Assembly (NCBI GenBank): GCA_000388065.2
Contig: KB932206.1
DNA from: Fonticula alba ATCC 38817
Lineage: Eukaryota; Protista; Nucleariida
Reading direction: 5' to 3' (one strand)
DNA length: 35,566 nt
Shown: in pieces, positions 3,421 to 35,566 of the stretch
Layout: each line of letters opens with the position of its first letter
How positions within the stretch are numbered: position 1 is the first letter of the stretch
Program-made: the position numbers and the translations under genes
The notes under the pieces: model-generated
Told to the model about the DNA's origin: nothing
Database searches by the model: none
What the model saw: the letters and a program-made list of their open reading frames with translations, nothing else

Positions 3421-3452
<32 letters not shown>

Positions 3453-9269: not shown

Positions 9270-9300
<31 letters not shown>

Positions 9301-14379: not shown

Positions 14380-14416
<37 letters not shown>

Positions 14417-15778: not shown

Positions 15779-15837
<59 letters not shown>

Positions 15838-18800
15838 TTCCCATCGTCGCAGGCCGTCCGACGGCTCGCCTGGCGGCCCGGCCTCGGGCCTCGCCGCGGC
15901 TCCCCACCAATGTCAGCCTGTCGATCTACCTGCGCTCCAAGGAGTTCTCCCCCTCGCCGCTCATCGATCGGGAGATGCTCTTCTCGCTGATGAAGCTGCT
16001 GTTTGTGGCGCACCCGATCAATTCGGTGGCCCTGCTCCAGCCGATCACCTTCCTGTGTGCCAACCGGTCGGTCAGCGCCTTTGTGCTGGCCTTCATCCTG
16101 TGTGTCATCAGCCCGAACCCGGCCTTGCGCATTGTCCTCGGGCCGAAGTACTCGTCGCTGGGGTTCCTCGGGTCGCGCCATGAGCGCGAATCGGCGGCCC
16201 TCATCCAGCGCATGCTGCGTGCCGGGCCCACCGGCGCCGGGGTGGAGGACCCCGGCGACGCGCCGAGCTGGACGCTCCCCTCGCGCGTGACCCTCCGCTC
16301 GGTGACCCTCCTGCGCGGGCTGATCGAGCGGTCCGACGTCTCCGGCACCATCAACCGCATGATGCTGAGCCCGGTGGACCTGGGGGTCATCCTGTCGGCC
16401 ACCTCGCAGCAGGCGGCCACCGGTGGGCCGGGGGCCGGGGGGCCGGCCGGCTCGGGCTCGGCCCCTGCTGCCGCCCCGCCGGGCCCGGGCCCGGCCCCTG
16501 TGGCCGCCTCCCGGCAGGTGGTCATCCCGCTGATTCACCTGATCGAGCTGCTGCACATCGATGCCATTGTGCACGACTCGCCGGTGCTCGAGAACCTCAT
16601 GGACTTGATCTTCAATGTGAGCCTGCTGCTGGTCCAGCGCCAAACCCCGCCGATGCATGTCATCGAGCAGCTCATGTCGCTGGAGCCGGCGCCCATCATC
16701 GAGCCCGTGCCGATCCTGGCTCCGAGCCCGCCGGCCTCGATGGCCTCGATGGCCCCGAGCGCCGGCGGGCCGGCCACCCCGGGCCCCGGCCCGGACACGG
16801 CCACCAGCGCCCCCCTGCCGCGCAGTCTCAACATCAGCCAGTTGCTGATCCCCACCACGTCCGTCTACCACCTGGTCAACCTGCTGCAGGTGCCGAATTG
16901 CTCCAGCCGCACCTTCGGCCTGACGCTGCTGGTGCTGTCCAACATCTCGGAGCTCCCGCGCTATCGGCCGGTGGTGCGCGATGCCATCCTGGCCTCCATC
17001 CGGACCTTGGGCCGGCGCACGGCCGCCGACATCGCCAGCCTGGCCGATCTGCTGGACCGGTTTGTCACCGTGGCCACGGTCACCCAGACCGACGAGCAGT
17101 CCAGCAGCACCAGCAGCACCGAGCAGCAAAAGATCGATGTCACCGCGGCCATGGCCAACATGGACCTGTCGCGCCTCAGCTCCCAGGTGTCCTCCCAGGT
17201 GCAGCTCCTGCGCACGGTCAAGGCCCTCGGGTCGCCCTTCAGTGTCGATGGCCCGGACTCGCCCTTCGGCCAGGCCTCTTCGGCGGGGCTTTCGGCCGAC
17301 GCCGGTCCCCCGGGGCCGGGCTCGGGCTCGGGCCCGGCTGCCGCCGGCGCCGGCGCCGGCCCCGCCATGGCCGACGGATCGCCCGACAGTCAGCCCCCTC
17401 TGCGCCCTGCGGCCCCGGTGCCGGTCAGCCCGCTGGCCGGGGCCGCCGACGCCACGGCCTCGCTGATGGCCGCCTTCCGGTGGAACATCGAGCAGGTGTT
17501 CCATGACCTGACGGCGGCCGGGCTCTGGCGGTCCCTGTCCCGGGCGTTGGACCTGCTCCTGCTGTCTTCGGACTTGACCCATGTGTCGGCGGTCTTGCTC
17601 CCGGTCATCGAGTGTCTCTTCCTCATTTGCCAGGTGAGCATCTTCAAGGAGCGCTCGCTGCCACAGACGGTCGACTCGACGCCCTGCCCGTCGGCCGGCC
17701 CGAGCCGGGCCCCCTCACCGGGCCCCGGCGGCGGCCACCCCGGGCCCCTGGCTCCGGCCGACATGGCGCACCCTCTCCCGGGCTCGCACTCGGGCTCCGG
17801 CTCCGGCTCCGGCTCCGGCTCGCCCGCCTCCTCGCCCGGGGAGTACCTGGTGAAGTTTGTCTACCGGTTCAAGGTCCTCATCAACCACATCATCCGGTCG
17901 CAGACCAACCTCATCAGCAAGGGGACCTTCCTGTGTCTGGTGACCCACCTGCCGGATGCACTGGACTTCGACATCAAGCGCACCTTCTTCAACCACCAGA
18001 TCCAGCAATTCCTGGACCCGAGCAGTCGGGCGGCCACGCAGGCCGCCGCCACGGCCGGCATGTTCAATGCCGGGACGCCGCCGGGCGTGGCGGCGGCGGC
18101 GGCGGCGGCGGTCTTCCCGCGACCCGGCGCCGGGGCCGCCTCGCCCGGCGGCGGCTTCCTGCCGACCGCGGCCGGGCCGGGATCGTCATTGCCCACGGCC
18201 GCCAGCATGACCGAGCTGGCGGCCCAAACGCGCCAGCCCATCCGGCTGACCGTCGACCGAGACACCGTCCTGGAGGACTCCTTCACGGCCATGCAATTCC
18301 TCAAGCCGGAGCGCGTGCGCCTGGCCCCCATCCAGATTACCTTCCGCGGGGAGCCGGCCGTCGATGCGGGCGGCGTCACTCGCGAGTGGTTCAACATCCT
18401 CACCCGGCAGATGTTCGACCCGAATTATGCCCTCTTTGAGAATGTCTCCGGCAAGAAGGTCACCCTGCAGCCGAACCGCCTGTCGCACCTGGCCTCGGCC
18501 AACCACCTGGCGTACTTCCGCTTTGTCGGGCGCATCATCGGCCGGGCCATCTTCGACGCGCGGGTGCTGGATGTCCACTTCACCCAGTCCCTCTACAAGC
18601 ACATGCTCGGCCGGCCGATCAGCCACCAGGACATGGCCGCGGTCGATCCGAGCTTCCACCAGAGCCTGGTGTGGATCCTGGAAAACAGCATCGACGACGT
18701 GCTGGACCTGACCTTCTCCCATGACACGGATGACCTGGGCCAGACGGTGGCCGTGGACTTGGTCCCCGGCGGGTCGGCCATCCCGGTGACCGACGCCAAC

Positions 18801-19478
18801 AAGCACGACTACGTGCGCCTGGTGGCGGAGCTCCGCCTGTCCAAGGCCATTGAGTCCCAAATTGGCGCCTTCCTGCAGGGCCTGCACGAGATCATCCCTC
18901 GGCACTTCCTGTCGATCTTCAGCGAGCAGGAACTCGAGTCCCTGATTGCCGGCATGCCGGACATCGATGTCGACGACTGGCGCAACAACACCCTCTACAC
19001 GAACTACTCCCCGGCATCGCCGCAGGTCCAGGTTCGTGCTCTCGCCCTCGCCACACGCACACACGCACACACGCACACACACGCCCGCCCATGCATGCTG
19101 CCTGGCCTTTTCCCCTCTCTTGCTCCTGGCCCATGTCGTCGATGCTAACGCGCCCATCTTCCCTCCCTCCCCATGATGCGGCCTGCTCAGTGGTTCTGGC
19201 GTGCGGTTCGCTCTTTCAGCAATGAGGAGCGCGCGCAGCTGTTGCAGTTCGTCACCGGGTCTTCGCGCATCCCGCTCGAGGGCTTCTCCCACCTGGAGGG
19301 GTCCAATGGCCGGCAGCGCTTCTCCATCAGCAAGGACTTCCGCAGCAACAACCGCCTGCCGGCGGCACACACCTGCTTCAACCAGCTGGACTTGCCGGAG
19401 TACGATTCCTACGAGCAGCTCCGCCGGAATCTCCTGACGGCCATCAGCGAGTGCACCACCGGCTTTGCCTTTGCCTGA
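530..19478 (+). CDS. HUWE1: HUWE1/Tom1-like HECT E3 ubiquitin-protein ligase, spliced, ~5,852 aa. Exons 530-565, 715-837, 1011-1829, 2084-3416, 3703-4146, 4329-15665, 15853-19031, 19191-19478
   Basis: All 7 introns are GT..AG with matching phases; exon lengths sum to 17,559 nt = 5,853 codons including TGA. N-terminus MVLRK...[21 protein letters not shown] resembles the Tom1/HUWE1 DUF908 start; ARM-like helical DUF908/DUF913 region follows, then a UBA and a long acidic disordered region. Pre-HECT segment LINHIIR...[10 protein letters not shown]; HECT motifs [66 protein letters not shown]; C-terminus ECTTGFAFA. Exons 1-2 are the least certain. Confidence 0.93.
1851..2010 (+). repeat. Intronic compound tandem repeat: ~20-bp unit CTTCTCTCTCTGTTTATGCA x3 (plus a degenerate copy), then 10-bp TTTCTCTTTC x~6
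   Basis: Read directly from the sequence, inside HUWE1 intron 3. Confidence 0.9.
3453..3617. other. Assembly gap (N) in HUWE1 intron 4
   Basis: N run flanked by poly-C. Confidence 1.
6392..6511 (+). other. UBA domain within the HUWE1/Tom1-like protein
   Basis: [40 protein letters not shown] fits the UBA pattern (L..MGF/LGF...AL....NN...A...LL). Confidence 0.85.
15780..15837 (+). repeat. Poly-C tract (58 C) in HUWE1 intron 6, between CTAAC branch candidate and 3' splice site
   Basis: Read directly from the sequence. Confidence 0.95.
18240..19475 (+). other. HECT catalytic domain, split by intron 19032-19190; catalytic Cys codon TGC at 19374-19376
   Basis: [15 protein letters not shown] start, HTCFN active-site motif, conserved -4 Phe in terminal GFAFA. 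Confidence 0.95.
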
Positions 19479-19632
19479 GCCGGGGCACTGCACGGACCCG
19501 CCCCCCCTCTCCCCCCCCCCTTCTCCCTGACATACATGTACTTTTATAGACCTTCCTTCTACCCTTCCCAAAAGGAAAAGGCGTTCGCCTGTGACCGTCA
19601 CCGTCCGCCACATGCCTCCCCCCATGTGTGCG

Positions 19633-19657
19633 CGACACACACACACACACACACACA
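19633..19657. repeat. (CA)n microsatellite in the 346-bp convergent HUWE1/PLRG1 3' region; similar CA runs near 350-370, 23657-23685, 31184-31207 and 31576-31592
   Basis: Read directly from the sequence. Confidence 0.85.
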
Positions 19658-19824
19658 TGACACAGGCACCAGAGAACAAGCAAGAGCGGCAGGGAAGCAG
19701 TGGCATTTTAGTGGAGAGGACAAGGACAGGGAAGCGGGGAAGGCGCAGACGCGAGCGCAAGCAAAGTGGCCCCGCCCGCTGGGCGTGCGCAAATGGGAAC
19801 ACCCGAGCGCCGGGACACCGCCCT

Positions 19825-22208
19825 TTAGTAGCGCTTGCGCTTGAGCATCGCCTTGAAAGCAATCGGGTGAGACTCGGGCGTGGCCTCGGCATCCTCGCAC
19901 CACACCTTGATGGACTTGTCCACCTCGCAGGTGATCAGGCGCGTCCCGGTGTGGTCGAAGGTGGACGACAGAATGCCACACTCGCTGGCCAGCGAGCCGG
20001 GCTGCGGGACCGTCCGCGCGGTCTGGAAGTTGTAGCCGGACTTCCAGTCGTAAAAGTGCATCATGCCATTGTCGGCTGCGTGGCGTGGTGTGATGTGATG
20101 TGGCGTGGTGTGATGTGACGTGGCATGGGGTGGCGTGGTGCGGCGTGGCATGGGGTGGCGTGGTGCGGCGTGGTGTGGCGCGGTGCGGCGCAGTGTGAGT
20201 CAACGCAGAGTGGCAGGCGGACACCGCAAGAGGGAGCAGATTGTGTGACGCACCGCCAGCGAACAGGACGTTGTCCTGGTTGATGGACATGGTGTTGACG
20301 ATCGGGTGGTCCGTCAGGGGGAGGTTCTGCAGGAAAGTGCCATTCGGGAACTGCCACTGCTTGATGTGGTCCGAGGAGCCGGATGCGAAGGTGTACTCGC
20401 TCGGGTGCAGCAGCACCGAGCGCACGCTCTTCTTGTGGTTGGTCAGGGTCTTGAGGCACTTGCCGGCGGCCAGGTCCCACAGGCGGACAGTGCTGTCCAT
20501 GCTGTTGAGCGAACAGGGAACCGAGCCAGGGAGAGAGGGGAGGGGGGGGGGGGGGGGGGGGGTGAGTCGGGCGGGAGGAAGGGGACGGCGCGAGCACGCG
20601 GGGAGCAAGTGATGCCACACCCCCCCCCCCCGGCGGGGGAGGGAACCGACACACCTGCCGGAGACAATTTGCGGGTTGACCGACTGCGCGGCCACCGAAG
20701 CCACGGTCTCCATGTGTCCAGTCAGCGTGTGGACACACTGCTTGGCACGGATGTCCCACACGCGGACCGAGGCGTCACGGCTGCCGGTGATGAGGACATC
20801 GAGCGACGGATGCACCGCCATGCAGTACACGCCATTCAGGTGCCCGTGGTACTTGCGAATGACCTTGTTGATCTCCAAGTCCCAGCAGAGGACCTGCTTG
20901 TCCTCGCCGGCCGAGAAGAGATACGGATGCCGCTGGCTGGCGGCCACGGCCCGCACGCCCATCGAGTGGGCCGTGAAGGTGGTCTTCAGGGTGCCGGAGG
21001 CAAGGTCCCAAATCTATGCGCAGCAGGAAAAAGCAAAGCCAGGCGCAGGCATCGCGAAGGGGGGAGGCCCGGCACAGGGAGCGAGGGAGCAGGAGGGCCG
21101 TTAGCAAGTGACCGACACCGGCGACAGGGCAGGCAGGAGGGCCAGCACCAGCCGGGCACCGGCGGCAGGGCGAACCTTGATGGTCTGATCGCGCGACCCG
21201 GTGGCGAACCACTGGTTGGTCGGGTCCACCGAGATGGACCGGACCCAGCCGCTATGGCCGGAGATGACCTGATGATCGCCACGGGAGGAGGCAGATGGAG
21301 AGAGAGGGGGAGGAGGGAGGAACGACCAGAGGGGGGGGGGGAGGGACAGGGACAGGGCCAAGGGGGCGGGGGCGTTTGGCAACGAAGGAGAGGTGAGTGA
21401 CGTGAAGGAGGGCAATCCCCGACCACACGGGCGAAACATCGAAGAGGAGGCGGAGAAGGGGCAGTGGACGGAAAAGAAAAAAAAAACCAGCACGCACACG
21501 CATGAGCTTCCAGGGGGCGTGCCAGGTCGGGCGCGGGACCGAGTGCGTGTGAGTCTGCAGGACGAGCGACCCGGACTCCGAGGGCGGCGCCGGGGCCCGG
21601 GCTCCAGGACCGAGGGCCGCCAGCTGCCGGTCTCCGCCGGACCCGGGGCCGCCGCTGCGCAGCACCAGCGACTGGCTGCCCGACGGGCGGCCCGACTGCT
21701 CGGCGCGGCCCGTGGCCCCGGCCACCGAGGCGTCGATGGCCGCAGCCAGGCCAGATGCCTCGGCCGTGCCGGCCTCCGCCGCGTTCTTCTTGGCCTCCGA
21801 GCGGTCCCTCCGCGTCGGGCGCTTGATGGACTCCGGCAGTCGGCGAACCACCTCATACTCGTCCAGGATTTTGGATGTCATCCGGAGCCTCTGCCTGGAC
21901 AGGAGGGAAAGGCGGATGGGCGGGGGGGGGGGNNNNNNNNNNNNNNNNNNNNNNNNNNNNNNNNNNNNNNNNNNNNNGGGGGGGTGGGGCAAAAAAGGGG
22001 CAAGCGGAGCAGGGGCAGGGGACGCGGCCAGCCTGGCATGCCAGACTGCAAGCCAGAGGAGGGAGACGCACGACGAGGAGTCCTCAAACAGGTCGTCCGG
22101 CGACCCGATGAACATGTCCAGCGCGCGCTTGGTTCGCGGCTTCAAGAAGGACACCACCGCCGGCGAGGGGGCGGCGGGGCTGGGCGGAGTCGGCACCGGG
22201 CTGGCCAT
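19825..22208 (-). CDS. PLRG1: PLRG1/Prp46/PRL1 WD40-repeat pre-mRNA splicing factor (Prp19/NTC complex), 494 aa. Exons 22208-22072, 21894-21498, 21268-21176, 21013-20655, 20501-20254, 20075-19825
   Basis: Five GT..AG introns with matching phases; 1,485 nt = 495 codons. Family signatures: KRALDMF...[119 protein letters not shown]. Confidence 0.96.
20078..20192. repeat. Pentanucleotide satellite (CGTGG/TGTGA/TGCGG variants) in last PLRG1 intron
   Basis: Read directly from the sequence; gives HHTTP/RHAT pseudo-peptides in the ORF track. Confidence 0.85.
21933..21977. other. Assembly gap (N) in PLRG1 intron 1
   Basis: N run flanked by poly-G. Confidence 1.
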
Positions 22209-22892
22209 GGTGAGGGCAGGGGTGGTGGTGGTGGTGGCGGTGGTGGTCCGGGCAGGAGCAGGAGAGGGAGGGGAGAAGAGGCGGGGAGGGCGGAGGAAGA
22301 GGGCGAGCAGGCAGGGGACACAGGGGGGGGGGAGGGAGGGAGGGAGGGAGGCGGTGACACAGGAGGATGGAGCGGGTGTGGCGGCCCCTTTGGGGCCCAG
22401 TGGGGGGAAGCCCAGCCGTCTCTTGAGCCGGCCCCGGCTGCGATTGCGGCGAGGGAGAGAGAGAGAGAGAAAGGGACAGGGGGGAGAGCCGTTCCCCCCC
22501 TGCGCGGCCGCCTGGCCGTCCCCCGCCCGCTCGCCGGCCCGCCCGGGGCCCGGCGAAACAACCGGTACGAGCATGGGAGCCGCGTTGGCATGCCGGTACG
22601 TGGGCACCTGGCCGATCGGCGGTCTAAGAGGCCCCAGGGGCGGAGGCCCTGACGGCATCCGCTGGCCGCCCGCCAATCAGGTATCTCCCACCACGGCCGC
22701 CCCCACCTCGCCTCTCCGCCTCCGCCTCCGCCTCCGCCTCCGCCTCCTGGCCCTCCTTCTCCGTGACGGCTATCGCCCCCCCTCCCTTCCTGTCGCAGCT
22801 CCCCGCGCCAGTCCTACCGCTCCCCGGCCACACCGCCCAGGCCTCCCTTCGCGCCCCCTCGCCTGGCCCTCGGACGGGCAGACCCCGCAATC
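22209..22892. promoter_or_regulatory. Head-to-head intergenic region, candidate bidirectional promoter and 5' UTRs for PLRG1 and gene 3
   Basis: 684 bp between divergent ATGs; contains CCAATCAG at ~22671-22678, (CTCCGC)n at 22713-22746 and GA repeats. No experimental support. Confidence 0.45.
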
Positions 22893-23992
22893 ATGGCCGA
22901 GCCGCCCCCCTCGCTGATCGGCATGCCGGAGCTGATCCAGCTGCCCGACCTCCCTCCTCTGCCGTCGGTCGGCAGCCTTCCCCTGCCGCCGGTGGGGGGG
23001 CTTCCGCCTCTGCCGACGGTCGGCGGGCTGCCGCCGCCGCCGATGGATTTGCCGGACCTGCCGCCGTCGATGATCGCCGATCCGGTGCCCGGGGCCATGG
23101 GTCTGCCGGACTTGACGGCGCCGGCGGCCGGGCTCCCGCCCCCGCCGCTCGCGCTCCTCGCTCCACACGGCCCCACCCTGACGCCGGCCCCGGGGGAGAG
23201 GCCCGAGGACGGGGCAGACCCGGCGTTCCTGTCCGACCGGCGGGTGGCCCAGTTTGTCCGCGCCAAGGCCGCCTCCGCGCCGGCGGCCGTGAAGCTGGTC
23301 CAGAGTGTCAACGAGGCCTGCCAGGTGCTGGATTCGATCGAGCGCGCGGTTGGGGACTTTTTCGACCGGATGTGCGACCCTGGTTGCCGACTTCTTCCCG
23401 CTGTCTCCCTGCGCTCCCTCTTTCCCCTTCCCGCCCCCTTGCTGACACGCTCGCGCCGCCGGCTGCCCTCCTCCCGCCAGTGAGATCTCCTGCTCAAGTC
23501 AGTACTCCATGGCTGATGCCGAAGGTGCGTCTTCATGCCGCCGGCCAGCGCCGGCGAGCTCGCTCCGCCGTCAGCCGTGCCCGGCTGCCAGGCCGCACGC
23601 ACGGCTTGGTCCATGCGCGCCTGCCTCTCCCCTGCACGCCCACTCACCCACCCACCCACACACACACACACGCACGCACACACACGTATGTATTTATCTG
23701 TCCAGACGATTACCAGCGTATCATCGCGCTCCTGGGCGAGCTCGAACTCATTCTCGACAAGAACCACCTGGTGCGTGCGCGTTCTCCAGCTCGTCCGCCC
23801 CCCGCCGCGGATGGTGCGGGGAGCCAGGGCGCGCTCAATTGGCAGACATGCCACCCTTCCTCGCTCGCAGGCGGGGGGCGCAAAAGAGGAGCCAAACACC
23901 CGAGGGAGGCAGGGCGGACGAAGACAGAGGCAAAGCCCGCGCACACACACACGCACACAGACGCATGCAAGACACTTCCTGGCCTGACCAAT

Positions 23993-24068
<76 letters not shown>

Positions 24069-24245
24069 CCAACCGCACCGCCCACCGCGTCCCAGCGCTT
24101 CCTTTCGCCCGCCCCGTCGCCAGCTGCCAACTCGGCGCTCGAGCGGCTCGAGACCATCCGCACCGCGTCCGACGTGCTCAAGGAGCACGTGCACAGGATA
24201 CGCTCGAACGCCCAGCGCGCGGTCAATCGTCACGCCCCTGTGTAA
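22893..24245 (+). CDS. 245-aa protein: Pro/Leu-rich N-terminus plus helical-bundle C-half; tentatively MED27/Med3-like Mediator tail subunit. Exons 22893-23371, 23481-23524, 23706-23770, 24096-24245
   Basis: Three introns (donors GTGCGA, GTGCGT, GTGCGT; CAG acceptors; CTGAC branch candidates in introns 1 and 3) join into one open frame of 738 nt ending TAA, with coding-like C/G third positions. The product call rests on a by-eye pattern match only (gene existence ~0.85, identity ~0.35). Confidence 0.7.
23995..24067 (+). repeat. Poly-C tract (73 C) in gene 3 intron 3, between CTGAC branch candidate and 3' splice site
   Basis: Read directly from the sequence. Confidence 0.95.
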
Positions 24246-27071
24246 TACACACATGATCACAGCTTATCTGCCCGGTTCTGGTCTCGCGCGTTCACCGGCC
24301 ACAGTTACGCACCCGCTCCCAGGCATCTGGTGTCGTCTTCCCCCCCCCCCCCCCGGGTTGGGTTACACATGCCCAGGTTACGCTGGGCTCTAAACTGCTG
24401 GGTCTCCCGCCGTATCCGATCGGCGCCGCCGGGGTTGATCGAGATCCCAGCGCGCGCGCACACCAAGGCAGCAGGACAACAGCGGCCCATGATGGAGGTC
24501 GCGCAGGCTATGCGGCCGCCGGGCCCGGCACCGGGGCCGATCGCCCGCTGCCGGATCCCGGCGCACCCCGATCCGCCACATGGGCCGCGGCCGCTCGATC
24601 CAGGCCACCCGAAAAAAAAAAAGGAACACCCTTGGCCACTCGGCATGGGTAGGATGGTGTGCTGGGCGAGCCCCCCGGCTCCCCTTCGCGGGAGGCCGAA
24701 GAAGGGGCGTAGGAGCGGGGACGGGTGAGGCGGATAGCCCCCCCCCCCTCTTTCCTATGGCTGGGGGTGTCTGCTTCTGCCGATGCAGATTGCTCCCTGG
24801 GGTGTTCCCCGGGGGGCGGGAGGGGGGGGGGGGGGGGGCGGCCGATGCCGCCTTCGCCGGGAGAGCCCAGGCTCCCCAGGCGGCCGACTAGCCAGCGACT
24901 AGTGGAGACTAAGTGCACTGAAGGATGCTTGGCGGCAGGAATGCCGCGGGCTAGGTGGTCTCGGGTGTGTGCGGTGAGATCGCTTCTCGGCTCTCCTTCT
25001 CCGCGGCGGAAGCAGTGCTGCGGCACTTGAAGGATGGCATTCTCAGACGGACCCCACGCGTGTACCATGTACATGCTCTCTCTCTCCCTGCCCGGCCTAT
25101 TGCGTTGTGCCCATCCCTCCTTGGGGATCCCTCGGATCCCCGCAACCAGGCCAAGCTGGAGTCAGGGGGGGGGGTCTTTACTTTTCAATTCGACTCTCGG
25201 TCCGTCGGAGGCGGCTTCCAGGCCTCACCACATCTGCGGGAGGCAGAGAAGGGGGGGGGGAGGCGATCCACGCACGGCCCAGCGGGGAGATGCGTTTCTC
25301 ACAGAGAAGGACGGCCGAGGAGGGCGTCTGCATCCCGGGGCCACCGGGACATGGTGTCCCCACGGTGGGTGTTTTTGCTTTTGCGCCTGGATCGGATCGA
25401 GCGGCATGGCCGATGCGGAGAAGATATCCCGTACCACTTCTCCCACACAGATGCCGACAATTTCGCCCTCCCATCAGCCCGGAGAGGGGACATGGGCGAG
25501 CCGGAAATCGGTCTGGGGGGCAGCCGTCGGCCTTCCTTTTTGCTATGTGTTCCTGGGGCGTCGGGCGTGGGGGTGGAGGGGGGGTGTGCCTTTTAAACGC
25601 GCTAGATCCCGGGGGATGAGGTGCCCACACTAGGGTGGGCAGCCGCCTCCCCCCCCCCCCCATACACGGATACACACACTTCCCCGAGGAGATGAGGGGC
25701 CCCAGGCGCAGGGAACCATGGACTCGGCGTTTGGGCAGGGAAAAGGGCACCCGCGCTTGCCTCGAGCCCATGCCGGGTCTTCTGTCCGGCCAAAGGTCTT
25801 CACCGGCCCTCCCCTCCACGGATCCCCCTCCACGGGGGTCCCTTTTGGTGCCGGGGGGGGGGGGGGTCTGGATCGCCAGGAGGAGGCGGGGGATGGGGAT
25901 ACGGGGGGCATCCTGGCCAAGGACGTGTGCCCTGTTGTCCCTCCCCCCCCTCGCCCATCACTTGCACGAAACGCCTCTGGTGCCCTCCGTGCCGAGCAAG
26001 CCCCGGGTATGAGGAGGGAGGAGACGCTGGGAGTGGGACAGCGAAGCCACCGAGCCGGCCTCGGGAGGGAGCTCCGGGGGCGCGGCGCTTGAACAGGGGA
26101 GGGCAACGGACGAGGGGCACAGGCCGGGGACCGGCGACCGGCGACCGGCGACCGGTGGCGGGAGGCGCAGGGGAGGGGAGGTGGGGCTGGTGGAGGCATG
26201 CGCCGCCTCCGGGGCCCGACCCCCCCCCCCCCTCCCGGGACCGAGCGAAGCGCCTTCCAGGAGCGCACCTATTAAACAATCCCCGCCGCGTGCTTCCGTC
26301 CGCCGCATATTGGACCATCACCCTGAGAGCGCACTCCATCCGGACCGTTTCTCCCCTCCCCCTTTTGCTTCCTCCGCTCGCAGCCTCCTGTGCGTGTCTG
26401 TGTCTGTGTCTGTGTGTGTGCCCGTTGAAGCGTGCCTGCCCGACACCGTTCCCTCCCCCTCGCCTCCCCGCCATCCCCGGTGTGACACCCTCACGCCTGT
26501 CGAGGTACGCCCCTGCCGCTCCCTTCCCCCGCCCCCCGCCCCTCTGCCATCCCCTCCCCAGTGGCCTGGCCACGACAGGGCCTCTCTCCCTTTCGCCGCC
26601 CCTCCGGCGAGCCCCCCTCTCCCGCGCGCGCGCGCGCGCGCGAGTGCCGGCCAAGCCTCCCCGAGATCGCCCCGATCGCCCCGATCGCCGACGCCCACGC
26701 CCCGGCAGCTGCCGTCGGATGGGACCGATCGGAGCGTGCCAGAGCTCCGTCCCCGCACGCGCGCGCACGCGCGCGCTAGGAGATCCAACACGCCCCCCCC
26801 CCCCCCCCCCCCCCGGGCTCCCGCCGAGATCGGGGGAGCATGCGAGGACGGCACGACGGGGGCTGGCAATCTAAAAGGGAGCCCGGCAACACGCCACTGC
26901 CCCGGGGGGGGCTTGCTGTCCAGGGTCCCTCCTCTCCCCTTCCCCCTCTTCTCCTTCTCTTTGGCCTCTCCCCCGCCGTGCACCCCTCCTGACAAATGCC
27001 GCCCCCTCAGTCAAGCAACCCCCTCCCCCTCCCGGTGTGTCTGTGGACGTGAGTTAGCCTCGAACGGCCTC

Positions 27072-27126
27072 NNNNNNNNNNNNNNNNNNNNNNNNNNNNN
27101 NNNNNNNNNNNNNNNNNNNNNNNNNN
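27072..27126. other. Assembly gap (N) just upstream of the beta-helix gene ATG
   Basis: N run followed by C-rich tract. Confidence 1.
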
Positions 27127-27167
27127 CCCCTCCCCCTCCCCCCCACCTCCCCTCTCGAAAGACAAAC

Positions 27168-30100
27168 ATGTCGATCCCCGTCTTCTGGTCCTCGGAGCAG
27201 GCCCTGCCCGATGACACTGTCATGGTCGGCGGAGCCGAGTTCTCCAAGAACACCGTGGTCATGATCTCGCGGCTGAATGACGACCCGCCGCGGGCCTTCG
27301 AGAGCCTGGCCCAGCGTGTCCATCGCCCGGCACAGGCCTCCTATGTCGGCACCGCGCGCGAGAAGTCCCCCCGGCGGGTGACGGCCCTGTCGCAGATTTT
27401 CGACCACTCGCCGGTGGCCGAGCAGCACCAGCACCACCATGCCGGGCACCAGCATGGCAACCCGCACGAGGAGTTCCTGTGCGCCAGCGACGCGGACCTC
27501 CGCCAGCTGATGGTCAGCGAGATGGCCGCCGAGGTCATCCAGTTCACGTCGTCCTCTTTGAAGTTCGTCGTGCCGGCCTCCTTTGCCGAGGGTGTTTTTG
27601 CCTTCTACCTGGCGGACACCACGCGCAATGCCCGGAGCGCCGTGCGGCTGATCAACCGGCCGGTTGTTTGGTGGCTGCACAAGCGCGTGGCCCAGCCGGC
27701 CGGGTCTTTCCAGATCTTCGGCAAGGCCCTGGCCCCGTACTCGGGCATCGCCGCCCGGCGCGCGGCCGCCAGCACGGCCTCCCGGTCCGCGTCGCAGGAT
27801 GACGCCGGCGAGCGCTGGTACGATGCCAGTGACGCGGCCGGTGTCGGGGCCGGGGCCCGGGCCCATGCCGCCGGCCCGAAGGCCGGCGCCGGCGCCGGCG
27901 CCGGCGCGGTGGCCCGCATCGCCGAACGCCTTGGCCATTTGGATCTGGGCCACCGGCAGCCGGCGGCCGCCGGCGGCGGGGGCGGCCGGGGGCTGCCCTC
28001 GACATCGGGCACGGCATCTCCGCCGGCGCTTCCGCCCCGGCGCCACCACTCCTTCGACGAGCAGCACCACGACGACGACGACTCCCCTGCTGCCACCACC
28101 GGCGGCGGCAACCTGGAGGATGACGGCGACATGCTGGCCGAGTCTTCGTCCGTGGAATCCTTCGTGCAGCTGACCCCGCCCGGGTCGGCGCGCGAGGGGG
28201 CCGTGGTGTGGGGCCGCGAGGCGGCCGTGGGCCGTCATTCCCAAGCCTCCGGCCTCTCTTCGTCCTCCTCCTCCTCGGGCAGCGTCGAGGCCCAGGCCAA
28301 CCATGGCGTGCGCATCCGCTTTGTGCGCAAGAACGACGGCCTGACCCGTGTCTTCGTCCTGCAGGATGCCAGCATCAACCAGTACTACCTGACGATGCAG
28401 CTCCCGCGCGACATGCAAACCGGCGAGTGGTATGTCGACGTCCACAATGGGTGCGTGTGTTTTCCGCCGGCCCCCGGCCGTGTGTGTGTGTGTTTCCCCC
28501 TTCCTCTTGCCCCCCTTCCTCCTGCCTGCGCGATCGCAGACACGGCGGGGGATGCGCACCGATGGCCATCCCATCGTGTTCGGCCCCTTTCTGACGCGCC
28601 CCTCGCTCGATGTGGTGGACATGCGCATTCGTGGGGGGCCCTCTTTCCCTCCCCCGGCATGTATTCCCCCTCCCCCTCTCCCTCCCTCCCTCCCTCCAGC
28701 TTTGGCGGTCCGACCACCTGGACCCCCTGCCCGGATCTGCTGACCATCGCCAATTTGAATGACAACTGGCCGACCAAGGTCTTCAATGTCAAGGCCCTCG
28801 GTCTGGACAAGGCCCTGGCCGCGGCCAAGGACAATGGCGGCGGCGTGGTGTACTTCCCCTCGGGCAAGTACTGGTTCTCTTCGCCGATCACGGTTCCCCC
28901 CCGGACGACCCTCCTGGGCGAGGGGATGGACACGGTGTCGCTGAATTACAGCAATGCCAACAACCCGAACAACAGCTACCTGATCACCGGCACGTCCATG
29001 CGCGTGGAGCACTTGACCATCTACTGCATGTCGCCGTATGTCAATGTGTTCCTCTGCCCGCGCGGGTCTTCCGACTGCCGGTTCCTCAGCGTGCGCTTCC
29101 GGTCCAACTGCTACATGAAGATGTTCACCGGCGACCCGAGCGACCGGACGCAGCATCTCCGCAGCCGGTCGGTCTTCAACATGATGACCGACAACTTCGA
29201 GATCCGGGACTGCGACATCTACTGCAACAACTTCTGCCTCTTCCTGGAGGGTGCCAGTGACGGTGAGATTGTCAACAACAAGTTCTACTTCGGCGGCCAG
29301 GGATACAGCCTCAATGCCTGCGACCGGCTGTCCATCATCGGGAATTCCTTCATCGGCAACACCTTCGATGCTGTGGGCAATGGCATTAGCAGGTGAGTGA
29401 TTTTGTCTTTACTTGCTCTGCGGCGGGGGGGGGGGGGGGGCCTGCTCTCTCCTCTCTTCCCCTTTCTTCACCAACGGGGGGGGGGGGCGGGTTGCCTGCC
29501 TGTGGTGTCGCCCCCTCCCCTCTCCGCCCCTTCCGCCAGAGACACATTCCCCATGATGTATACTGACACAGCCGCCCGCCACGATGCCCACCCCCACCTC
29601 CCGCCCCTCCGCGCTCAGCAACTCCTACAACATGAACAAGAAGTACTCCGAGCGCATCTTCTACTTCGACAACTTCCACCAGCATGTGTACGGCAACAAC
29701 CGCGAGATCATGACCCTGGATGGGGCCGGCGGGTGCTACTATGGCGGGGTGTCGGCCGTCCGGGGCAACACCGTCACCATCAGCGGCAACCCCAACTACA
29801 AGCCGGACACCATGCCGGACACCATCAAGCGCGACTGGCGCAACGGCATGATGGCCATCATCAAGGGCAAGGGCGCCGGCCAATACCGGCGCATTGTGTC
29901 CAGCACCGACAAGGAGTGGGTCTTGGATGAGCCCTTCGTCGTGACCCCGGACTCCAGCAGTGTCATCACCATCACCTACTACCGCGGGCACTACCTCTTC
30001 CTGGGCAATGTCTGGGAGGATGGCGGCCCGGTGCAGCTGTACGGCTGCGCCATGGAGTGCGTGGTGGCCGAGAATGTGGGCCGGCGCATGGGCGGCTTTG

Positions 30101-30483
30101 CCAACTGGTCGCTGGACCCGCATAACATGGGCCTGCAGCCGTCCTTCAACAATGTCTTCAGCGAGAACCTCGTGGAGGAGGGCCTCGGCTTCGGGACCGA
30201 CTACTCGGTCTTCTGGTGCACGGGCTTCCACGCGGTCCCGGATGAGCACATCACCCGGTTCATCGAGTGGCGCCGCAACCACTCCCTCAACAACGCCTAC
30301 TTCCGGAGCACCAAGAACATGACCGACTGTGTCTTCGAGAAGAACGACTTCCGCAACGCCGACCTCTTCATGAACACCAAGGAGATCACCAGCAAGGATT
30401 GCGTCCTGCGCAAGAACAAGCTGACCAACATCCCGCGTCTGATCGACGGCCCGGGGGCCACCCTGTGGAAGATCATCATCTAA
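27168..30483 (+). CDS. Right-handed parallel beta-helix protein (pectate lyase superfamily / Pectate_lyase_3-like putative carbohydrate-active enzyme) with N-terminal beta-sandwich-like region, 946 aa. Exons 27168-28450, 28700-29392, 29619-30483
   Basis: Introns 28451-28699 (GTGCGT..CAG) and 29393-29618 (GTGAGT..CAG, TACTGAC branch) are both phase 2; 2,841 nt = 947 codons. Pectate_lyase_3-type cap NGGGVVYFPSGKY....PITVPPRTTLLGEG. Repeated beta-helix rungs with Asn/Cys ladders: FEIRDCDIY, GEIVNNKFY, LSIIGNSFI, YLFLGNVWE, CVVAENVGR, NVFSENLVE, CVFEKNDFR, CVLRKNKLT. The start codon may be preceded by further exons. Confidence 0.85.
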
Positions 30484-31611: not shown

Positions 31612-34600
31612 TCAGAAGTAGCTCTCGCGGTGCCGGCGCAGCTGGTTGACCACACGGATCTGAGTACGCACATCGGAGATGGCGGTCTCCCACAGGAGCC
31701 GGCCCCGGGTGACGGACTCCGTCTCGATCGGGGGGACCTTCTTCTCGGAGATGGGGATCACCCGCACCACCAGGCCCAGGGGCCAGGACAGGAAGCCGAT
31801 GCCAATGCAAATGAGCCACTGGTACCAGTTGAGCGGGTGCGTGCGGAAGGCCGCCCCGCCGAACTCCACCACCAGCACCTGGATGGCCACGGTCAGCAGC
31901 ATGATCAGGATGAAGGACAGGTGGCGGTGCAGGCCGCGGAAGATATTCACCGACCGGTCCAACACACGGCAGTTGACCTCGTTGAAGAACTGCATGAAGA
32001 CGAAGGTGTTGAAGACAATGGTCCGGTGGACACCGCGGTCCACGCTGCTGGTGCTGTCCAGGTCAAACAGCCCAAAGCCCAGGTAGTAGAGGATGAAGCA
32101 CACCAGCAGCTGGAAGGCCGACTGGCCGAGGATGTTCTTCCACATCTGCCGGGAAATGAGCGACCCGGTCTTCGGGTGCGGCGGGCGCTGGAGCAGCTCG
32201 TCGGTCGGCGGCTCGGTGGCCAGGGCCAGCGCGGCCAGCGTGTCCATGATGAGGTTCACCCAGAGCAGCTGCACGGCCGACAGGACGGCCGTGCCGTCCG
32301 GATCGGAAATGGCACTCACGAAGGACAGCGTCACGGCCACCACATTGATGGTGAGCTGGAATTGCAGGAACTTGCGCACCGCGTCGAAGACACCACGGCC
32401 CCACACCACGGCGCGGACGATGGACGCGAAGTTGTCATCCATCAGGATGATGTGAGCCGCCTCCTTGGCCACCTCGGTACCGGCAATGCCCATGGCGAAG
32501 CCGACATTGGCCAGCTTCAGGGCCGGGCCGTCGTTGGTCCCGTCACCGGTGACCGCCACCACGTGGCCCATCTCCTTCAGGTGCCGGACCAGCAGCTGCT
32601 TGTCGGTGGGCGACGACCGGGCCAGGACCTCGAGGCTCGGCAGGATGCGGCTCATCTGCAGCGGGTTCAGCCGGCGGAACACCTGGCCCTCCATGACGAT
32701 GCCGGTGGGGCTGAGGATGCCGCACTCGCGGGCGATGGCCCGCGCGGTCATCAGGTTGTCGCCGGTGACCATGCGCACGCGGATGCCGGCCTGCTGGCAC
32801 TGGCGCACGGCGTGCGGCACCTCCGGACGCAGGGGGTCCTGGATGCCGACAATGCCGATGAGCGTCATGTTGGCCTCGGAGGGGAACTCGTCGTCAGTGA
32901 GCGACTCGATTTCTGCATGTATATGTGCGCGCGGGGGGTGGGGGTGGGGGGGGGGGGATCAGAGGTCAGTGGGGGGGCCCGTAGCCTCAGGCGTATGCCA
33001 AGAGCGGGAGGGGTGCAGGAGAGAGGGAGAGAGAAGCAAAAAGAGACAGAAAAAGAGAGGGAGAGAGAGAAAGAGAAACGGCTGGCGGGCGCTGGCGAGA
33101 GCAGACCCAAATGCAAGCACGCACCGTCCGCCTCGAAATCCCGGTATGCCATGCAAATGGCACGCAGGGCATTGTTGGCGAAGGACTCGATCGACACCAG
33201 GTACGAGCGGATGATCTCCTCGGTCATGGGGGCCACATAGTAGGGGGCATGGTCGGCCGCATTGCCGGCGGCGGCGGCTCCCTCGCCGATGGCCACCGAG
33301 GACGACCGGGAAATGGACACCGACCCGGGGAGCGGGTCCGGCGACAGGTACGACAGGCAGTTGGCCAGAACCATCTCCGCGGCACCCTTGCAGTAGAGAC
33401 GGTACTTGCCGTTGTTCAGCCGCACGACGGTGGACATGCGCTTGCGATCCGAGGAGAAGGGCACCAGCCGGACAATCGGGTTGGCCTGGCGCACGATCGA
33501 GTAGTCGAAGCCGGCCGCCGCGCGAATGTACTCCAGAAGAGCCACCTCGGTCTTGGACCCGAGGAAGGTCGTCACACCGTCCTCGACGGTCTCGGCGGCG
33601 TTGGAGTTGATGCAAATCCCGTGGGCAAGGATCTCGGTCAGCCCGGTGCCAATCTGCTGCGGGATGTTCCGGCTGCCCTCGATGTCGGTGAAGGACTTGG
33701 NNNNNNNNNNNNNNNNNNNNNNNNNNNNNNNNNNNNNNNNNNNNNNNNNNNNNNNNNNNNNNNNNNNNNNNNNNNNNNNNNNNNNNNNNNNNNNNNNNNN
33801 NNNNNNNNNNNNNNNNNNNNNNNNNNNNNNNNNNNNNNNNNNNNNNNNNNNNNNNNNNNNNNNNNNNNNNNNNNNNNNNNNNNNNNNNNNNNNNNNNNNN
33901 NNNNNNNNNNNNNNNNNNNNNNNNNNNNNNNNNNNNNNNNNNNNNNNNNNNNNNNNNNNNNNNNNNNNNNNNNNNNNNNNNNNNNNNNNNNNNNNNNNNN
34001 NNNNNNNNNNNNNNNNNNNNNNNNNNNNNNNNNNNNNNNNNNNNNNNNNNNNNNNNNNNNNNNNNNNNNNNNNNNNNNNNNNNNNNNNGGGGGGGGGAGG
34101 GGGGAAGAGACAGCAATGCAGAGCACCGCGGCGTGGACCTGGAGGGGGAGAGGCACATCGGCCCCGGGAAAGAAAGAAAGAGCACGCACCTGGACAACGG
34201 TCATGCGGTTCTGGGTCAGGGTACCGGTCTTGTCCGAGCAAATGGTCGTCGCACCACCCATGGTCTCGCAGGCGGCCAGGATTCGGACAAGGTTGTTGTC
34301 GCGCAGCATCTGAATGGTGGCATAGGCCAGGGCCAGGGTGACGGCCATGGGCAGGCCCTCCGGCACGGCCATCACCACGACCGCCACGGCGGTAATGATG
34401 AACCCCACGATGTCTTGGACGATGGCCGACGCGCCGCTGGGCCAGGACTTGTTGATGGCTGAATGGGCGCCACGCCCATCCATGCACCGGCACACACGCA
34501 CAGACATCGAGACACGGAAGCAGGCAACGAGGCGACCAGACCGAGCGACCGGAACACCAACGGCGGCCAGGGGGGGCCCGATATGGAGATGATGATATGT

Positions 34601-35566
34601 CGGCGGGTGTCAGCAGAAAGAAAAAAAAAGGACAAAGGGCCCGCGCGGGGGGGAGAGGGGGAAAAGGAAAGCAAGGCAGGGAAAAAGACCGGCGCGCACC
34701 GTGGATGGCACAATACTTGACGATCAGGATGAAAAGCATGAGCAGCGCCACGGCCAGGCCGATCTTGCCGATGGTCTCGGACAGATCGGCCAGCTTGTCC
34801 TGCAGGGGGGTATTCTCATTGCCGGTGGACATGGCTGCCAGGGTGCTACCATACATGGAGTGCTCGCCGACACAGGTGACCACCATGGAACCGACACCCT
34901 GCAGGACCTTCGACCCGGACAGGAGGAAAGGCCCGGACCCCTTGGAGCTGGAGACCGGGGCGTCATCCTTGTCGCTGCCAGGCTGCCGGCCATGGCACAC
35001 GATCTTCTTGATGGCGTCCGACTCGCCGGTCAGGCTGGACTCATCGCACTGAATGTCATGGCCCTCAAGCAGGACACCATCGGCGCAAAGGACATCACCG
35101 GTGTCGATGATCAGGATGTCACCGACAACCACCTCGTACACCGAGATGGACAGACGCTCGCCGGACCGGATGACCGTCACATTGCGGTCCTCGCGCTTGG
35201 CATTCAGCTTGCGGAACTGGCGCTCCTTCTGGTAGTCGTTACCGGCACTGACCAGCACCACGGCCACCACGGCCACCATGATGGCCACACCCTCGACCCA
35301 GGACCCGAGCTCGTACTCGTTGTCCTGGCTGCCGGAGGACCCGCCAGACCGGTCGCGCGTCACCTCCTCGTAGATACCAATGGCCACGGACACCAGGGAC
35401 GCGCAAATCAGCATGATCAGCGTCGGGTCCTGCAGCGCCTCCCAGACCAGCTCCAGGAAGGTCACCGACGGGGGCTTGGGAATGGTGTTCGTGCCGTAGA
35501 CCGTCTGCCGGGCGTGGACGTCCTCATTGGGGACACCCCGCGTCGGGTCCACCTTCAGCAGCTTGG
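31612..35566 (-). CDS. PMC1: P-type IIB Ca2+-transporting ATPase (PMCA/Pmc1/ATP2B family), 5' end outside window. Exons >35566-34700, 34458-34190, (start in gap 33701-34088)-33125, 32912-31612
   Basis: Motifs [31 protein letters not shown]-type [13 protein letters not shown], phosphorylation site CSDKTGTLT (Asp codon 34234-34232), [79 protein letters not shown]. Intron phases consistent where visible. Confidence 0.96.
33701..34088. other. Assembly gap (N) in the Ca2+-ATPase gene, hiding a 3' splice site and probably a few codons
   Basis: N run; coding sequence resumes at 33700 with no visible AG acceptor. Confidence 1.

What the first reader, a model, noticed from the sequence alone, without database searches (positions are those of the whole stretch)
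27168..30483. Bacterial-type beta-helix glycan-processing gene, apparently horizontally acquired and intronised
Seen: a 946-aa beta-helix protein between core eukaryotic housekeeping genes, with host-like codon usage and two canonical introns, so it is not simple contamination. Its ordered motifs are PVFWSSE...PDDTVMVGG, RPVVWW, FQIFGKAL, YYLTMQLP.D...GEWYVDVHNG-FGG...W, WPTKVFNV, NGGGVVYFP.GKY, NREIMTLDGAGGCYYG, DW..G...IIKGKGAGQYRRIV, W..D.PF.V.PD.SS.I.IT, YLF.GN..EDGG..QLYG and GGF.NW......QPS. This series matches my recollection of uncharacterised 'pectate lyase superfamily / GH28-related' proteins from Planctomycetota, Verrucomicrobiota/Lentisphaerae and Armatimonadota, not fungal GH55/GH28 enzymes. 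Removing intron 1 restores the VHNGFGG motif. Inference: HGT-derived enzyme of an undescribed family, perhaps used to digest bacterial prey exopolysaccharide or remodel the organism's own matrix or stalk glycans. The N-terminus corresponds to the mature bacterial protein without its signal peptide.
Basis: partly seen in the sequence, partly recalled or inferred. Interest (0 to 1): 0.72.

Follow-up and report, generated by a model that had tools for sequence, protein, structure and literature searches.

The report
Bacterial beta-helix gene in Fonticula
The slime-mould-like amoeba Fonticula alba carries an expressed, intron-containing nuclear gene for a sugar-polymer-binding "beta-helix" protein whose relatives are almost all bacterial. 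It is a sound case of gene transfer from bacteria, but its biochemical job is still unknown.

Summary
Window 27168-30483 (+) is a three-exon gene with GT..AG introns at 28451-28699 and 29393-29618. Its 946-aa product is the public record Fonticula alba H696_04043 (XP_009496189.1). It lies on a 2.5-Mb scaffold between a HUWE1/Tom1-like HECT ligase plus a WD40 gene and a P-type ATPase.

- **Host signature:** GC3 is 0.90 and codon usage matches the neighbours (RSCU r 0.90-0.95).
- **Transcripts:** contigs from two independent studies show intron 2 spliced out. Intron 1 splicing is inferred from depth arithmetic only.
- **Family:** the protein matches, end to end and in the same order, a family of about 700-750-aa secreted bacterial beta-helix proteins at 33-38% identity. 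Members come from Planctomycetota, Verrucomicrobiota, Lentisphaerota, Kiritimatiellota, Armatimonadota and others. No specific Pfam or NCBIfam model and no solved structure covers the family.
- **Phylogeny:** Fonticula is a long branch between two well-supported bacterial or metagenomic groups.
- **Other eukaryotes:** only one other eukaryote-sourced sequence was seen, an unnamed EukProt transcript. It is closer to bacterial proteins than to Fonticula.

Horizontal acquisition is therefore well supported. Function remains inferred as polysaccharide-active. The Fonticula copy has two low-complexity inserts, no signal peptide as annotated (an assembly gap lies 42 nt upstream), and has lost two near-invariant acidic residues. 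This is a new member of a known kind, of moderate interest.

The parts
27072..27126 (.). Assembly gap (55 N) 42 nt upstream of the start codon, so the 5' end of the gene model is not secured
27049..27161 (+). Candidate 5'-UTR or upstream intron spanning the gap (GTGAGT donor at 27049; pyrimidine tract plus AG at 27160-61, in frame with the ATG). Speculative
   Evidence: Sequence reading; no read evidence
27168..28450 (+). Exon 1, aa 1-428 (first two bases of codon 428). N-terminal Ig-like beta-sandwich region, colinear with the bacterial mature N-terminus
   Evidence: RNA contigs X1 records 1-3
27294..27521 (+). Fonticula-specific insert 1 (aa 43-118, His/Gln-rich), about 63 aa longer than the bacterial family
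   Evidence: Family-HMM alignment; GC3 0.91
27744..28346 (+). Fonticula-specific low-complexity insert 2 (aa 193-393, Ala/Gly/Ser-rich), about 190 aa longer than the bacterial family. Both borders lie inside RNA contigs
   Evidence: X1 records 2 and 3
28451..28699 (+). Intron 1, 249 nt, GT..AG, in frame and stop-free; interrupts the VHNG|FGG motif
   Evidence: splicing inferred from X1 record 4 and depth arithmetic
28700..29392 (+). Exon 2, aa 428-659. Start of the right-handed parallel beta-helix (PF12708 N-cap, NosD-like repeats)
29337..29339 (+). Codon for Ile641, at a position that is Glu in 309 of 325 aligned family members
29393..29618 (+). Intron 2, 226 nt, GT..AG, phase 2
   Evidence: Spliced out in contigs of runs X1 and X7, from two studies
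29619..30483 (+). Exon 3, aa 659-946 plus TAA. Rest of the beta-helix, with the family's most conserved loops
29698..29745 (+). Most conserved family block (aa 686-701, N-R-E-x-x-T-x-D-G-x-G-G-x-Y-x-G). E688 and D693 are retained; D is changed to N at 686

Best explanation
This is a nuclear gene of Fonticula alba that descends from a bacterial gene acquired by horizontal transfer. It has since been fully domesticated: it has two spliceosomal introns, host GC3 and codon usage, and two host-style low-complexity inserts, and it is transcribed and spliced.

The protein has N-terminal Ig-like beta-sandwich domains followed by a right-handed parallel beta-helix of about 500 aa. It belongs to an uncharacterised family of secreted bacterial proteins. 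Those proteins occur either inside Wzy-type exopolysaccharide biosynthesis clusters or in glycan-degradation operons.

The most likely activity, by inference only, is binding and cleaving or modifying a complex, probably acidic, polysaccharide along the groove of the helix, as related beta-helix glycanases, lyases and epimerases do. HGT origin, expression and fold are shown here. Substrate, chemistry, cellular location and biological role are not.
For: - **Gene and genomic setting:** the gene model and its identity with H696_04043 rest. Eukaryotic neighbours lie on the same sequence.
- **Host signature:** GC3 is 0.90 and RSCU r is 0.90-0.95 against the neighbouring gene.
- **Transcripts:** intron 2 is removed in contigs of two studies, X1 and X7. 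Intron bins have zero depth. The 5.84 depth in bin 28327-28446 equals exactly what is expected if the left 111 letters of X1 record 4 lie on 28345-28450 plus 28700-04, meaning intron 1 is spliced.
- **Family match:** the protein matches a profile of 18 bacterial or metagenomic homologues colinearly, at 540 bits and E 2.4e-166.
- **Exhaustive HMMER search:** 165 representatives score E<=1e-30. The best reach only 36-38% identity over full-length matches, and none is closer.
- **Bacterial genomes:** 23 loci, and every one whose record title names a lineage is a PVC-group MAG.
- **Sources of close hits:** the names and sources looked up for the 20 nearest representatives, and the 102 profile hits, are bacterial or metagenomic, apart from P0001 itself and P0014.
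- **ESM Atlas:** the nearest clusters are 100% Bacteria, TM 0.87-0.91.
- **Tree (LG+G4, 68 rows):** Fonticula sits between splits supported at 98/96 and 99/92, inside a 49-row group at 100/97.
- **Structure:** AF2 model pLDDT 87.7, pTM 0.89. The nearest solved folds are AlgE6/AlgE4 epimerase A-modules (Z 30.6, rmsd 2.2, 327 aa), an alginate epimerase/lyase, phage tailspike depolymerases, RbmB lyase and GH28.
- **Bacterial contexts:** EPS clusters with GTs, Wzy, Wza and Wzz (L027 Methylococcus, L001), and a glycosidase/lyase operon (L025).
Against: - As annotated, the protein has no signal peptide, while the bacterial homologues examined and P0014 have one. A cytosolic location would not fit a role on extracellular glycans, unless the 5' end is hidden by the N gap.
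- Two near-invariant acidic positions are changed: E to I at 641 (Glu in 309/325) and D to N at 686 (Asp in 288/325).
- The Fonticula branch is very long (1.48 substitutions per site). Relaxed constraint or a changed, even non-catalytic, function is therefore possible.
- No family member has been characterised, and the bacterial gene contexts are mixed.
- The donor lineage is not resolved.
- An AU test does not reject grouping Fonticula with the other eukaryote-sourced sequence (p 0.144).
Confidence: 0.8

Rival explanations
1. The gene came by HGT but is no longer an enzyme. It would be a catalytically altered or dead beta-helix protein, for example a glycan-binding or scaffold protein, possibly intracellular, kept for another role or drifting.
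For: Near-invariant Glu replaced by Ile641 and Asp by Asn686. No signal peptide in the annotated model. Longest terminal branch in the tree. About 250 aa of low-complexity inserts.
Against: 47 of 66 columns conserved at 85% or more are retained, including E688, D693, D600, D770, D793, E899 and the G-x-G-x-G-Q block. Position 641 lies at the end of a PB2 strand, two residues before an Asn-ladder turn in the model's secondary structure. That suggests a structural residue, not a catalytic one. The reading frame is intact over 946 codons, with strong codon bias and spliced transcripts.
Confidence: 0.25
2. The gene belongs to an ancient eukaryotic family inherited vertically and lost almost everywhere, or it was acquired once in an older eukaryotic ancestor shared with the source of P0014.
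For: A second eukaryote-sourced homologue exists: P0014, a EukProt Trinity transcript with a eukaryote-like signal peptide and AT-rich composition. The AU test does not reject Fonticula+P0014 as a clade (p 0.144).
Against: P0014 is 43-45% identical to many bacterial or metagenomic proteins but only 32-33% identical to Fonticula. It sits inside the 46-row bacterial core clade in the free tree. No other EukProt, NCBI or UniRef eukaryote appears among the hits whose sources were shown. P0014 could also be a bacterial contaminant of a protist transcriptome.
Confidence: 0.05
3. Assembly artefact: a bacterial contaminant fragment was scaffolded into the Fonticula genome across the N gap.
For: A 55-N gap lies directly upstream of the gene. 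Fonticula cultures contain prey bacteria.
Against: There are two GT..AG introns, one shown to be spliced in RNA-derived contigs of two studies. GC3 and RSCU equal those of the neighbours. Gap-free sequence runs from the stop codon to the ATPase gene's 3' end at 31612. No bacterial protein is more than 38-41% identical.
Confidence: 0.01

Closest known systems
Uncharacterised bacterial 'glycosyl hydrolase family 28-related' / PF12708 beta-helix proteins of about 700-750 aa (e.g. Armatimonadia MEN6642145.1; PVC-group MAG loci L002-L024; Methylococcus P0333)
   Same: Colinear over the whole length: mature N-terminus, two Ig-like domains, and the beta-helix with the D-R-E..T.D-G-x-G-G and G-x-G-x-G-Q-Y-R blocks. 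Identity is 33-38%. Predicted-structure TM is 0.87-0.91.
   Different: The Fonticula copy has two introns, two low-complexity inserts (about 63 and 190 extra aa), no signal peptide as annotated, and I641 and N686 in place of near-invariant E and D.
AlgE4/AlgE6 mannuronan C-5 epimerase A-modules (2pyg, 5lw3) and alginate epimerase/lyase 8ja4
   Same: Best solved-structure match for the beta-helix (Z 28.6-30.6, rmsd 2.1-2.9, 321-351 aa). They share the N-cap sequence motif.
   Different: Only 15-17% identity. Sequence similarity is confined to the first 150-200 residues. The epimerase catalytic stretch (..YGFDPHE..) aligns to a non-conserved family segment with no equivalent motif. Z scores decline smoothly to unrelated beta-helices (Z about 24), so the match is not specific.
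Phage tailspike / EPS depolymerases and the Vibrio VPS lyase RbmB (6f7k, 3gq8, 2vbk, 9ozl)
   Same: Right-handed beta-helix acting on bacterial surface polysaccharides (Z 25-28). RbmB, like some family members, is encoded with EPS genes.
   Different: No detectable specific sequence relationship. Not trimeric tail proteins. Catalytic residues not shared.
CAZy beta-helix hydrolases GH28, GH55, GH87, GH110
   Same: Same superfamily fold and the PF12708-type N-cap.
   Different: No PF00295 (GH28) hit. GH55 matches only through its two N-caps. Foldseek TM is about 0.25-0.46 at 7-12% identity.

Membership tests
Pectin-lyase-like right-handed beta-helix superfamily (Pfam PF12708 Pect-lyase_RHGA_epim) | Pfam model hit above the gathering score | tested here: met
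   Exon 2: 40.5 bits against cut-off 27, E 3.5e-10; NosD 24.6 against 23.6
Pectin-lyase-like right-handed beta-helix superfamily | Parallel beta-helix fold | tested here: met
   AF2 pLDDT 87.7, pTM 0.89; VIA Z up to 30.6 to solved beta-helices
Unnamed bacterial 'GH28-related' 700-750-aa family (PVC group, Armatimonadota and others) | Full-length colinear match to a family profile | tested here: met
   540 bits, E 2.4e-166, three colinear segments covering HMM positions 28-713
Unnamed bacterial 'GH28-related' 700-750-aa family | Conserved acidic and Gly-rich blocks (D600, E641, D686, E688, D693, G742/744/746, Q747, D770, D793) | tested here: inconclusive
   All are kept except E641 (now I) and D686 (now N); 47 of 66 conserved columns are retained
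Unnamed bacterial 'GH28-related' 700-750-aa family | N-terminal signal peptide (secreted) | tested here: not met
   Fonticula starts at family-HMM position 28. The assembly gap 42 nt upstream leaves the 5' end open.
GH28 polygalacturonase family | PF00295 Glyco_hydro_28 hit / GH28 catalytic motifs | tested here: not met
   No PF00295 match at E<=1 on any exon. GH28 structures reach only Z about 24 at 7-12% identity.
AlgE-type mannuronan C-5 epimerase | Catalytic Y-G-F/I-D-P-H-D/E stretch | tested here: not met
   In the profile-to-AlgE6/AlgE4 alignment, that stretch faces a variable family segment with no such motif
Bacterium-to-eukaryote HGT | Recipient sequence nested among donor-domain sequences with support | tested here: met
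   Splits 98/96 and 99/92 on either side of Fonticula
Bacterium-to-eukaryote HGT | Absence from other eukaryotes | tested here: inconclusive
   Only P0014 (EukProt transcript, source unknown) among the hits with sources shown. Genomes of other nucleariids could not be searched directly.
Bacterium-to-eukaryote HGT | Integration in the host genome: introns, host codon usage, linkage, transcripts | tested here: met

The most novel reading that the evidence does not exclude
Fonticula co-opted a bacterial exopolysaccharide-processing beta-helix enzyme to build or remodel its own secreted stalk and sorocarp matrix, or to breach prey capsules during collective feeding. A bacterial gene would then have contributed directly to an independent origin of aggregative multicellularity. 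The bacterial family would also represent a new carbohydrate-active enzyme family with a novel catalytic loop (D-R-E..T.D-G).
Probability: 0.1. Interest if true: 0.75.

Novelty: new member of a known kind. Interest (0 to 1): 0.4.

Why it matters
Bacterial glycan-active genes in bacterivorous protists are a familiar pattern, so the transfer itself is not surprising. Three things make this case useful.

- It is a clean, well-documented HGT in the sister lineage of fungi, an organism used to study an independent origin of aggregative multicellularity.
- It points to a widespread bacterial beta-helix family with hundreds of representatives. The family is often embedded in EPS clusters and has no characterised member, no dedicated Pfam or NCBIfam model and no solved structure.
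- The Fonticula copy shows what domestication looks like: introns, low-complexity inserts, and possible loss of the signal peptide and of two conserved acidic residues.

Tried and rejected
- **Word-index search with exon 2 alone** found only two relatives. The exhaustive search was needed to see the family.
- **Default mixture-model tree (LG+C20 PMSF)** did not finish in two 300-s calls. I fell back to LG+G4, so long-branch effects on Fonticula's exact position are not controlled.
- **AU test for Fonticula+P0014** was not decisive (p 0.144).
- **Raw RNA-seq run X16** (label 'organism B') gave essentially no reads on the gene. It gives no information on strand, 5' end or expression level. That run's label may not be this organism.
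- **The intron-1 joint** was not listed by read laying, because 28660-28704 was masked as a repeat. I inferred it from depth arithmetic only.
- **Two non-canonical 'joints' in X1** (27902>28056 and 27984>28256, sides of 20-21 nt, high depth) were rejected as cross-mapping of GC-rich repeat transcripts.
- **PDB profile search** matched only the N-cap. Foldseek and VIA gave generic beta-helix hits with no specific family.
- **NCBIfam** gave nothing near cut-off for Fonticula or for the bacterial members.
- **Literature search** for the locus tag and accessions found nothing, and nothing in the Fonticula collective-feeding paper PMC9097593.
- **Upstream signal-peptide exon:** none found in 26600-27048.
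- **Handling of the spliced model:** I gave no self-joined spliced sequence to any search tool. Searches used exon references, the in-frame read-through reference 27168-29390, and the database's own record P0001. Exons were joined only inside a local script, to count codons.
Full report
**1. What is there**

Reading the sequence gives a three-exon gene on the + strand.

| Feature | Coordinates | Notes |
|---|---|---|
| Exon 1 | 27168-28450 | starts at the ATG |
| Intron 1 | 28451-28699 | 249 nt, GTGCGT..CAG, in frame and without a stop |
| Exon 2 | 28700-29392 | |
| Intron 2 | 29393-29618 | 226 nt, GTGAGT..CAG |
| Exon 3 | 29619-30483 | ends in TAA |

- The exons total 2841 nt, or 946 codons plus stop.
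- The word-index search returned an identical 946-aa public protein, P0001. This is Fonticula alba H696_04043 (XP_009496189.1, KCV69624.1, UniRef A0A058Z5R4), carried on a 2.53-Mb scaffold.
Removing intron 1 joins VHNG to FGG.
- A 55-N gap (27072-27126) lies 42 nt upstream of the ATG.

**2. Setting**

- Upstream on the + strand is a giant HUWE1/Tom1-like ligase (DUF908, DUF913, UBA, HECT; about 1029-19148).
- A WD40 gene follows on the - strand (19598-21856).
- Downstream, convergent, is a P-type cation ATPase (31612-35552, - strand).
- No N run lies between the stop codon and the ATPase's 3' end.
- GC3 of the gene is 0.90 (0.91 in the conserved C-terminal 553 codons), against 0.88-0.905 in the ligase. 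RSCU correlation with the ligase is 0.90-0.95.

**3. Transcripts (3574 letters laid, within the operators' limit)**

- Logan contigs of run X1 (2012, study P1) and X7 (2024, study P3) both carry the joint that skips 226 nt with GT..AG ends, which is intron 2.
- All three contig runs (X1, X5, X7) have zero depth in the purely intronic bins 28567-28686 and 29407-29526.
- The intron-1 joint was not listed because 28660-28704 was masked as a repeat.
- X1 record 4 (396 nt) lies on 28705-28989 with 111 further letters to its left.
- The 5.84 depth of bin 28327-28446 equals exactly 47 positions of record 3 at 4.5 plus 102 positions of record 4 at 4.8. That is what is expected if record 4 continues from 28700 straight to 28450. 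I therefore take intron 1 as spliced, but by inference.
- X1 records 2 and 3 run without mismatch across both borders of the large low-complexity insert, so that insert is exonic.
- The one raw-read RNA run tried (X16) gave essentially nothing. Strand, 5' end and expression level remain unknown.

**4. What the protein is**

- **Family scans.** Exon 2 passes Pfam's threshold for PF12708 (Pect-lyase_RHGA_epim) and NosD. Exons 1 and 3 have no family. NCBIfam has nothing near cut-off.
- **Exhaustive search.** The HMMER search with residues 365-946 found 1433 representatives at E<=1e-3 and 165 at E<=1e-30. The best full-length matches reach only 36-38% identity.
- **Colinearity.** A profile of 18 of these proteins matches P0001 colinearly (540 bits):

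| Fonticula residues | Family-HMM positions | Comment |
|---|---|---|
| 5-42 | 28-65 | immediately after the bacterial signal peptide |
| 43-118 | 66-78 | insert 1, about 63 extra residues |
| 119-192 | 79-153 | |
| 193-393 | 154-164 | insert 2, about 190 extra residues |
| 394-940 | 165-713 | |

- **Structure.** The AlphaFold model of residues 365-946 is confident (pLDDT 87.7, pTM 0.89). It shows an Ig-like sandwich followed by a long right-handed beta-helix.
- **Solved relatives.** The PDB profile search matches only the N-cap motif shared by GH55, AlgE epimerases, GH87, GH110 and phage appendages.
- **Structural ranking.** AlgE6/AlgE4 A-modules rank first (Z 30.6, rmsd 2.2, 327 residues, 17% identity). 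Next come an alginate epimerase/lyase, tailspikes, NosD, RbmB, PL6 and GH28, with Z falling smoothly to about 24. The fold is certain; no characterised family can claim the protein.
- **AlgE catalytic motif.** In the profile alignment, the AlgE catalytic stretch faces a variable segment.

**5. Who else has it**

- In one genome per bacterial species, 23 loci encode relatives. Every locus whose record title names a lineage is a MAG of Verrucomicrobiota, Lentisphaerota/Victivallales, Kiritimatiellota or Planctomycetota, including Kuenenia, Phycisphaerales and Pirellulales.
- Named database members add Armatimonadia, Gemmatimonadetes, Thermoguttaceae, Methylococcus and Filimonas.
- The nearest ESM-Atlas clusters are 100% bacterial.
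- The 20 closest representatives were looked up, and the sources were shown for 102 profile hits. Among all of these, the only eukaryote-sourced entries are P0001 itself and P0014, a 717-aa Trinity transcript from EukProt.
- P0014 has a signal peptide and an AT-rich, Cys- and Asn-rich composition.
- It is 43-45% identical to many bacterial or metagenomic proteins, 32-33% identical to Fonticula, and has no eukaryotic neighbour of its own.
- It is either a second, independent acquisition in some protist or a bacterial contaminant.

**6. Phylogeny**

The tree used 68 rows and 720 columns, with IQ-TREE LG+G4, ultrafast bootstrap and SH-aLRT.

- Fonticula is a long terminal branch (1.48).
- One split (98/96) separates it from a 46-row core clade. 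That clade holds all the named PVC-group, Armatimonadia and Gemmatimonadetes sequences, and P0014.
- Another split (99/92) separates Fonticula plus that core from 21 further metagenomic members. A 49-row group including Fonticula has 100/97.
- Bacterial sequences therefore lie on both sides. The donor cannot be named.
- Forcing Fonticula and P0014 together costs 10.45 lnL units and is not rejected (p-AU 0.144).
- The site-heterogeneous model did not finish.

**7. Functional clues and cautions**

- **Bacterial contexts are mixed.**
  - The Methylococcus copy lies inside a Wzy/Wza/Wzz exopolysaccharide cluster (L027).
  - P0003 lies in a glycosyltransferase, pyruvyl-transferase and methyltransferase cluster (L001).
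  - P0186 lies in an operon with GH71-like, GHL6, alpha-L-fucosidase, SGNH esterase, polysaccharide lyase and RhaT genes (L025).
  - P0275 lies next to an alpha-N-acetylglucosaminidase.
  - The other contexts are uninformative.
- This fits a secreted enzyme that trims, cleaves or modifies complex polysaccharides, but no member has been tested.
- **Conserved residues.** Across 327 family members, Fonticula keeps most near-invariant residues: D600, E688, T691, D693, G742/744/746, Q747, D770, D793 and E899.
- It differs at two acidic positions:

| Position | Fonticula | Family |
|---|---|---|
| 641 | Ile | Glu in 309 of 325 |
| 686 | Asn | Asp in 288 of 325 |

- In the model's secondary structure, position 641 ends a PB2 strand two residues before an Asn-ladder turn. 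That suggests a structural role, not a catalytic one, but I could not inspect coordinates.
- **Signal peptide.** The annotated protein lacks one. No upstream exon encoding one was seen in 26600-27048.
- A GTGAGT at 27049 and a pyrimidine tract plus AG at 27160-61 would allow an intron across the gap. That is speculative.

**8. Verdict**

This is a domesticated gene of bacterial origin from an uncharacterised beta-helix family, not GH28 or GH55.
- The proposed roles in prey-EPS digestion or stalk-matrix remodelling are reasonable but untested. The missing signal peptide and the two substitutions weaken them somewhat.
- No paper in the searchable library names this gene.
- It is a new member of a known kind, bacterium-to-protist transfer of a glycan-active gene, and of moderate interest.

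- I gave no self-joined spliced sequence to a search tool. Searches used exon references, an in-frame read-through reference and the public record P0001. The joined step was left out of all searches.

Noticed in passing
window 1029-19148 (+): Giant HUWE1/Tom1-like HECT ubiquitin ligase (DUF908, DUF913, UBA, HECT), including a single 3981-codon open frame at 4238-16183. A 165-N gap lies at 3453-3617.
   Followed up: partly
window 31612-35552 (-): P-type cation ATPase (E1-E2_ATPase, Cation_ATPase, Hydrolase, Cation_ATPase_C), convergent with the beta-helix gene. The apparent GC dip to 0.44 at 33001-34000 coincides with a 388-N gap (33701-34088) and is probably an artefact of counting Ns.
   Followed up: partly
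window 28451-28699: Intron 1 is a multiple of three and stop-free, so retaining it would add 83 residues inside the VHNG|FGG motif. One X1 contig runs 43 nt into it before diverging at a (GT)n tract (loose end at 28493).
   Followed up: partly
P0014 (EukProt Trinity transcript, 717 aa): A second eukaryote-sourced member of the same bacterial family. It has a eukaryote-like signal peptide and AT-rich composition, and it retains both acidic residues that Fonticula lost. Its source organism is unknown. It may be an independent HGT into another protist or a contaminant.
   Followed up: partly
L027 8001-10232 (Methylococcus), L001 10001-12298, L025 8001-10115: Bacterial homologues sit either inside Wzy/Wza/Wzz-type EPS biosynthesis clusters or in a fucosidase, esterase and lyase degradation operon. 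The family may include both EPS-processing and catabolic members.
   Followed up: partly
window 21900-26900: About 5 kb between the WD40 gene and the beta-helix gene has long GC-rich open frames on both strands but no Pfam match. It also has a 45-N gap at 21933-21977. Content not identified.
   Followed up: partly
runs X5/X6 and X16 (label 'organism B'): Contigs of X5 hold the gene with a few differences (for example 5 in 247 nt at 28030-28276). A large poly-A RNA-seq run under the same species label showed essentially no reads. The label may cover a different organism or strain.
   Followed up: no
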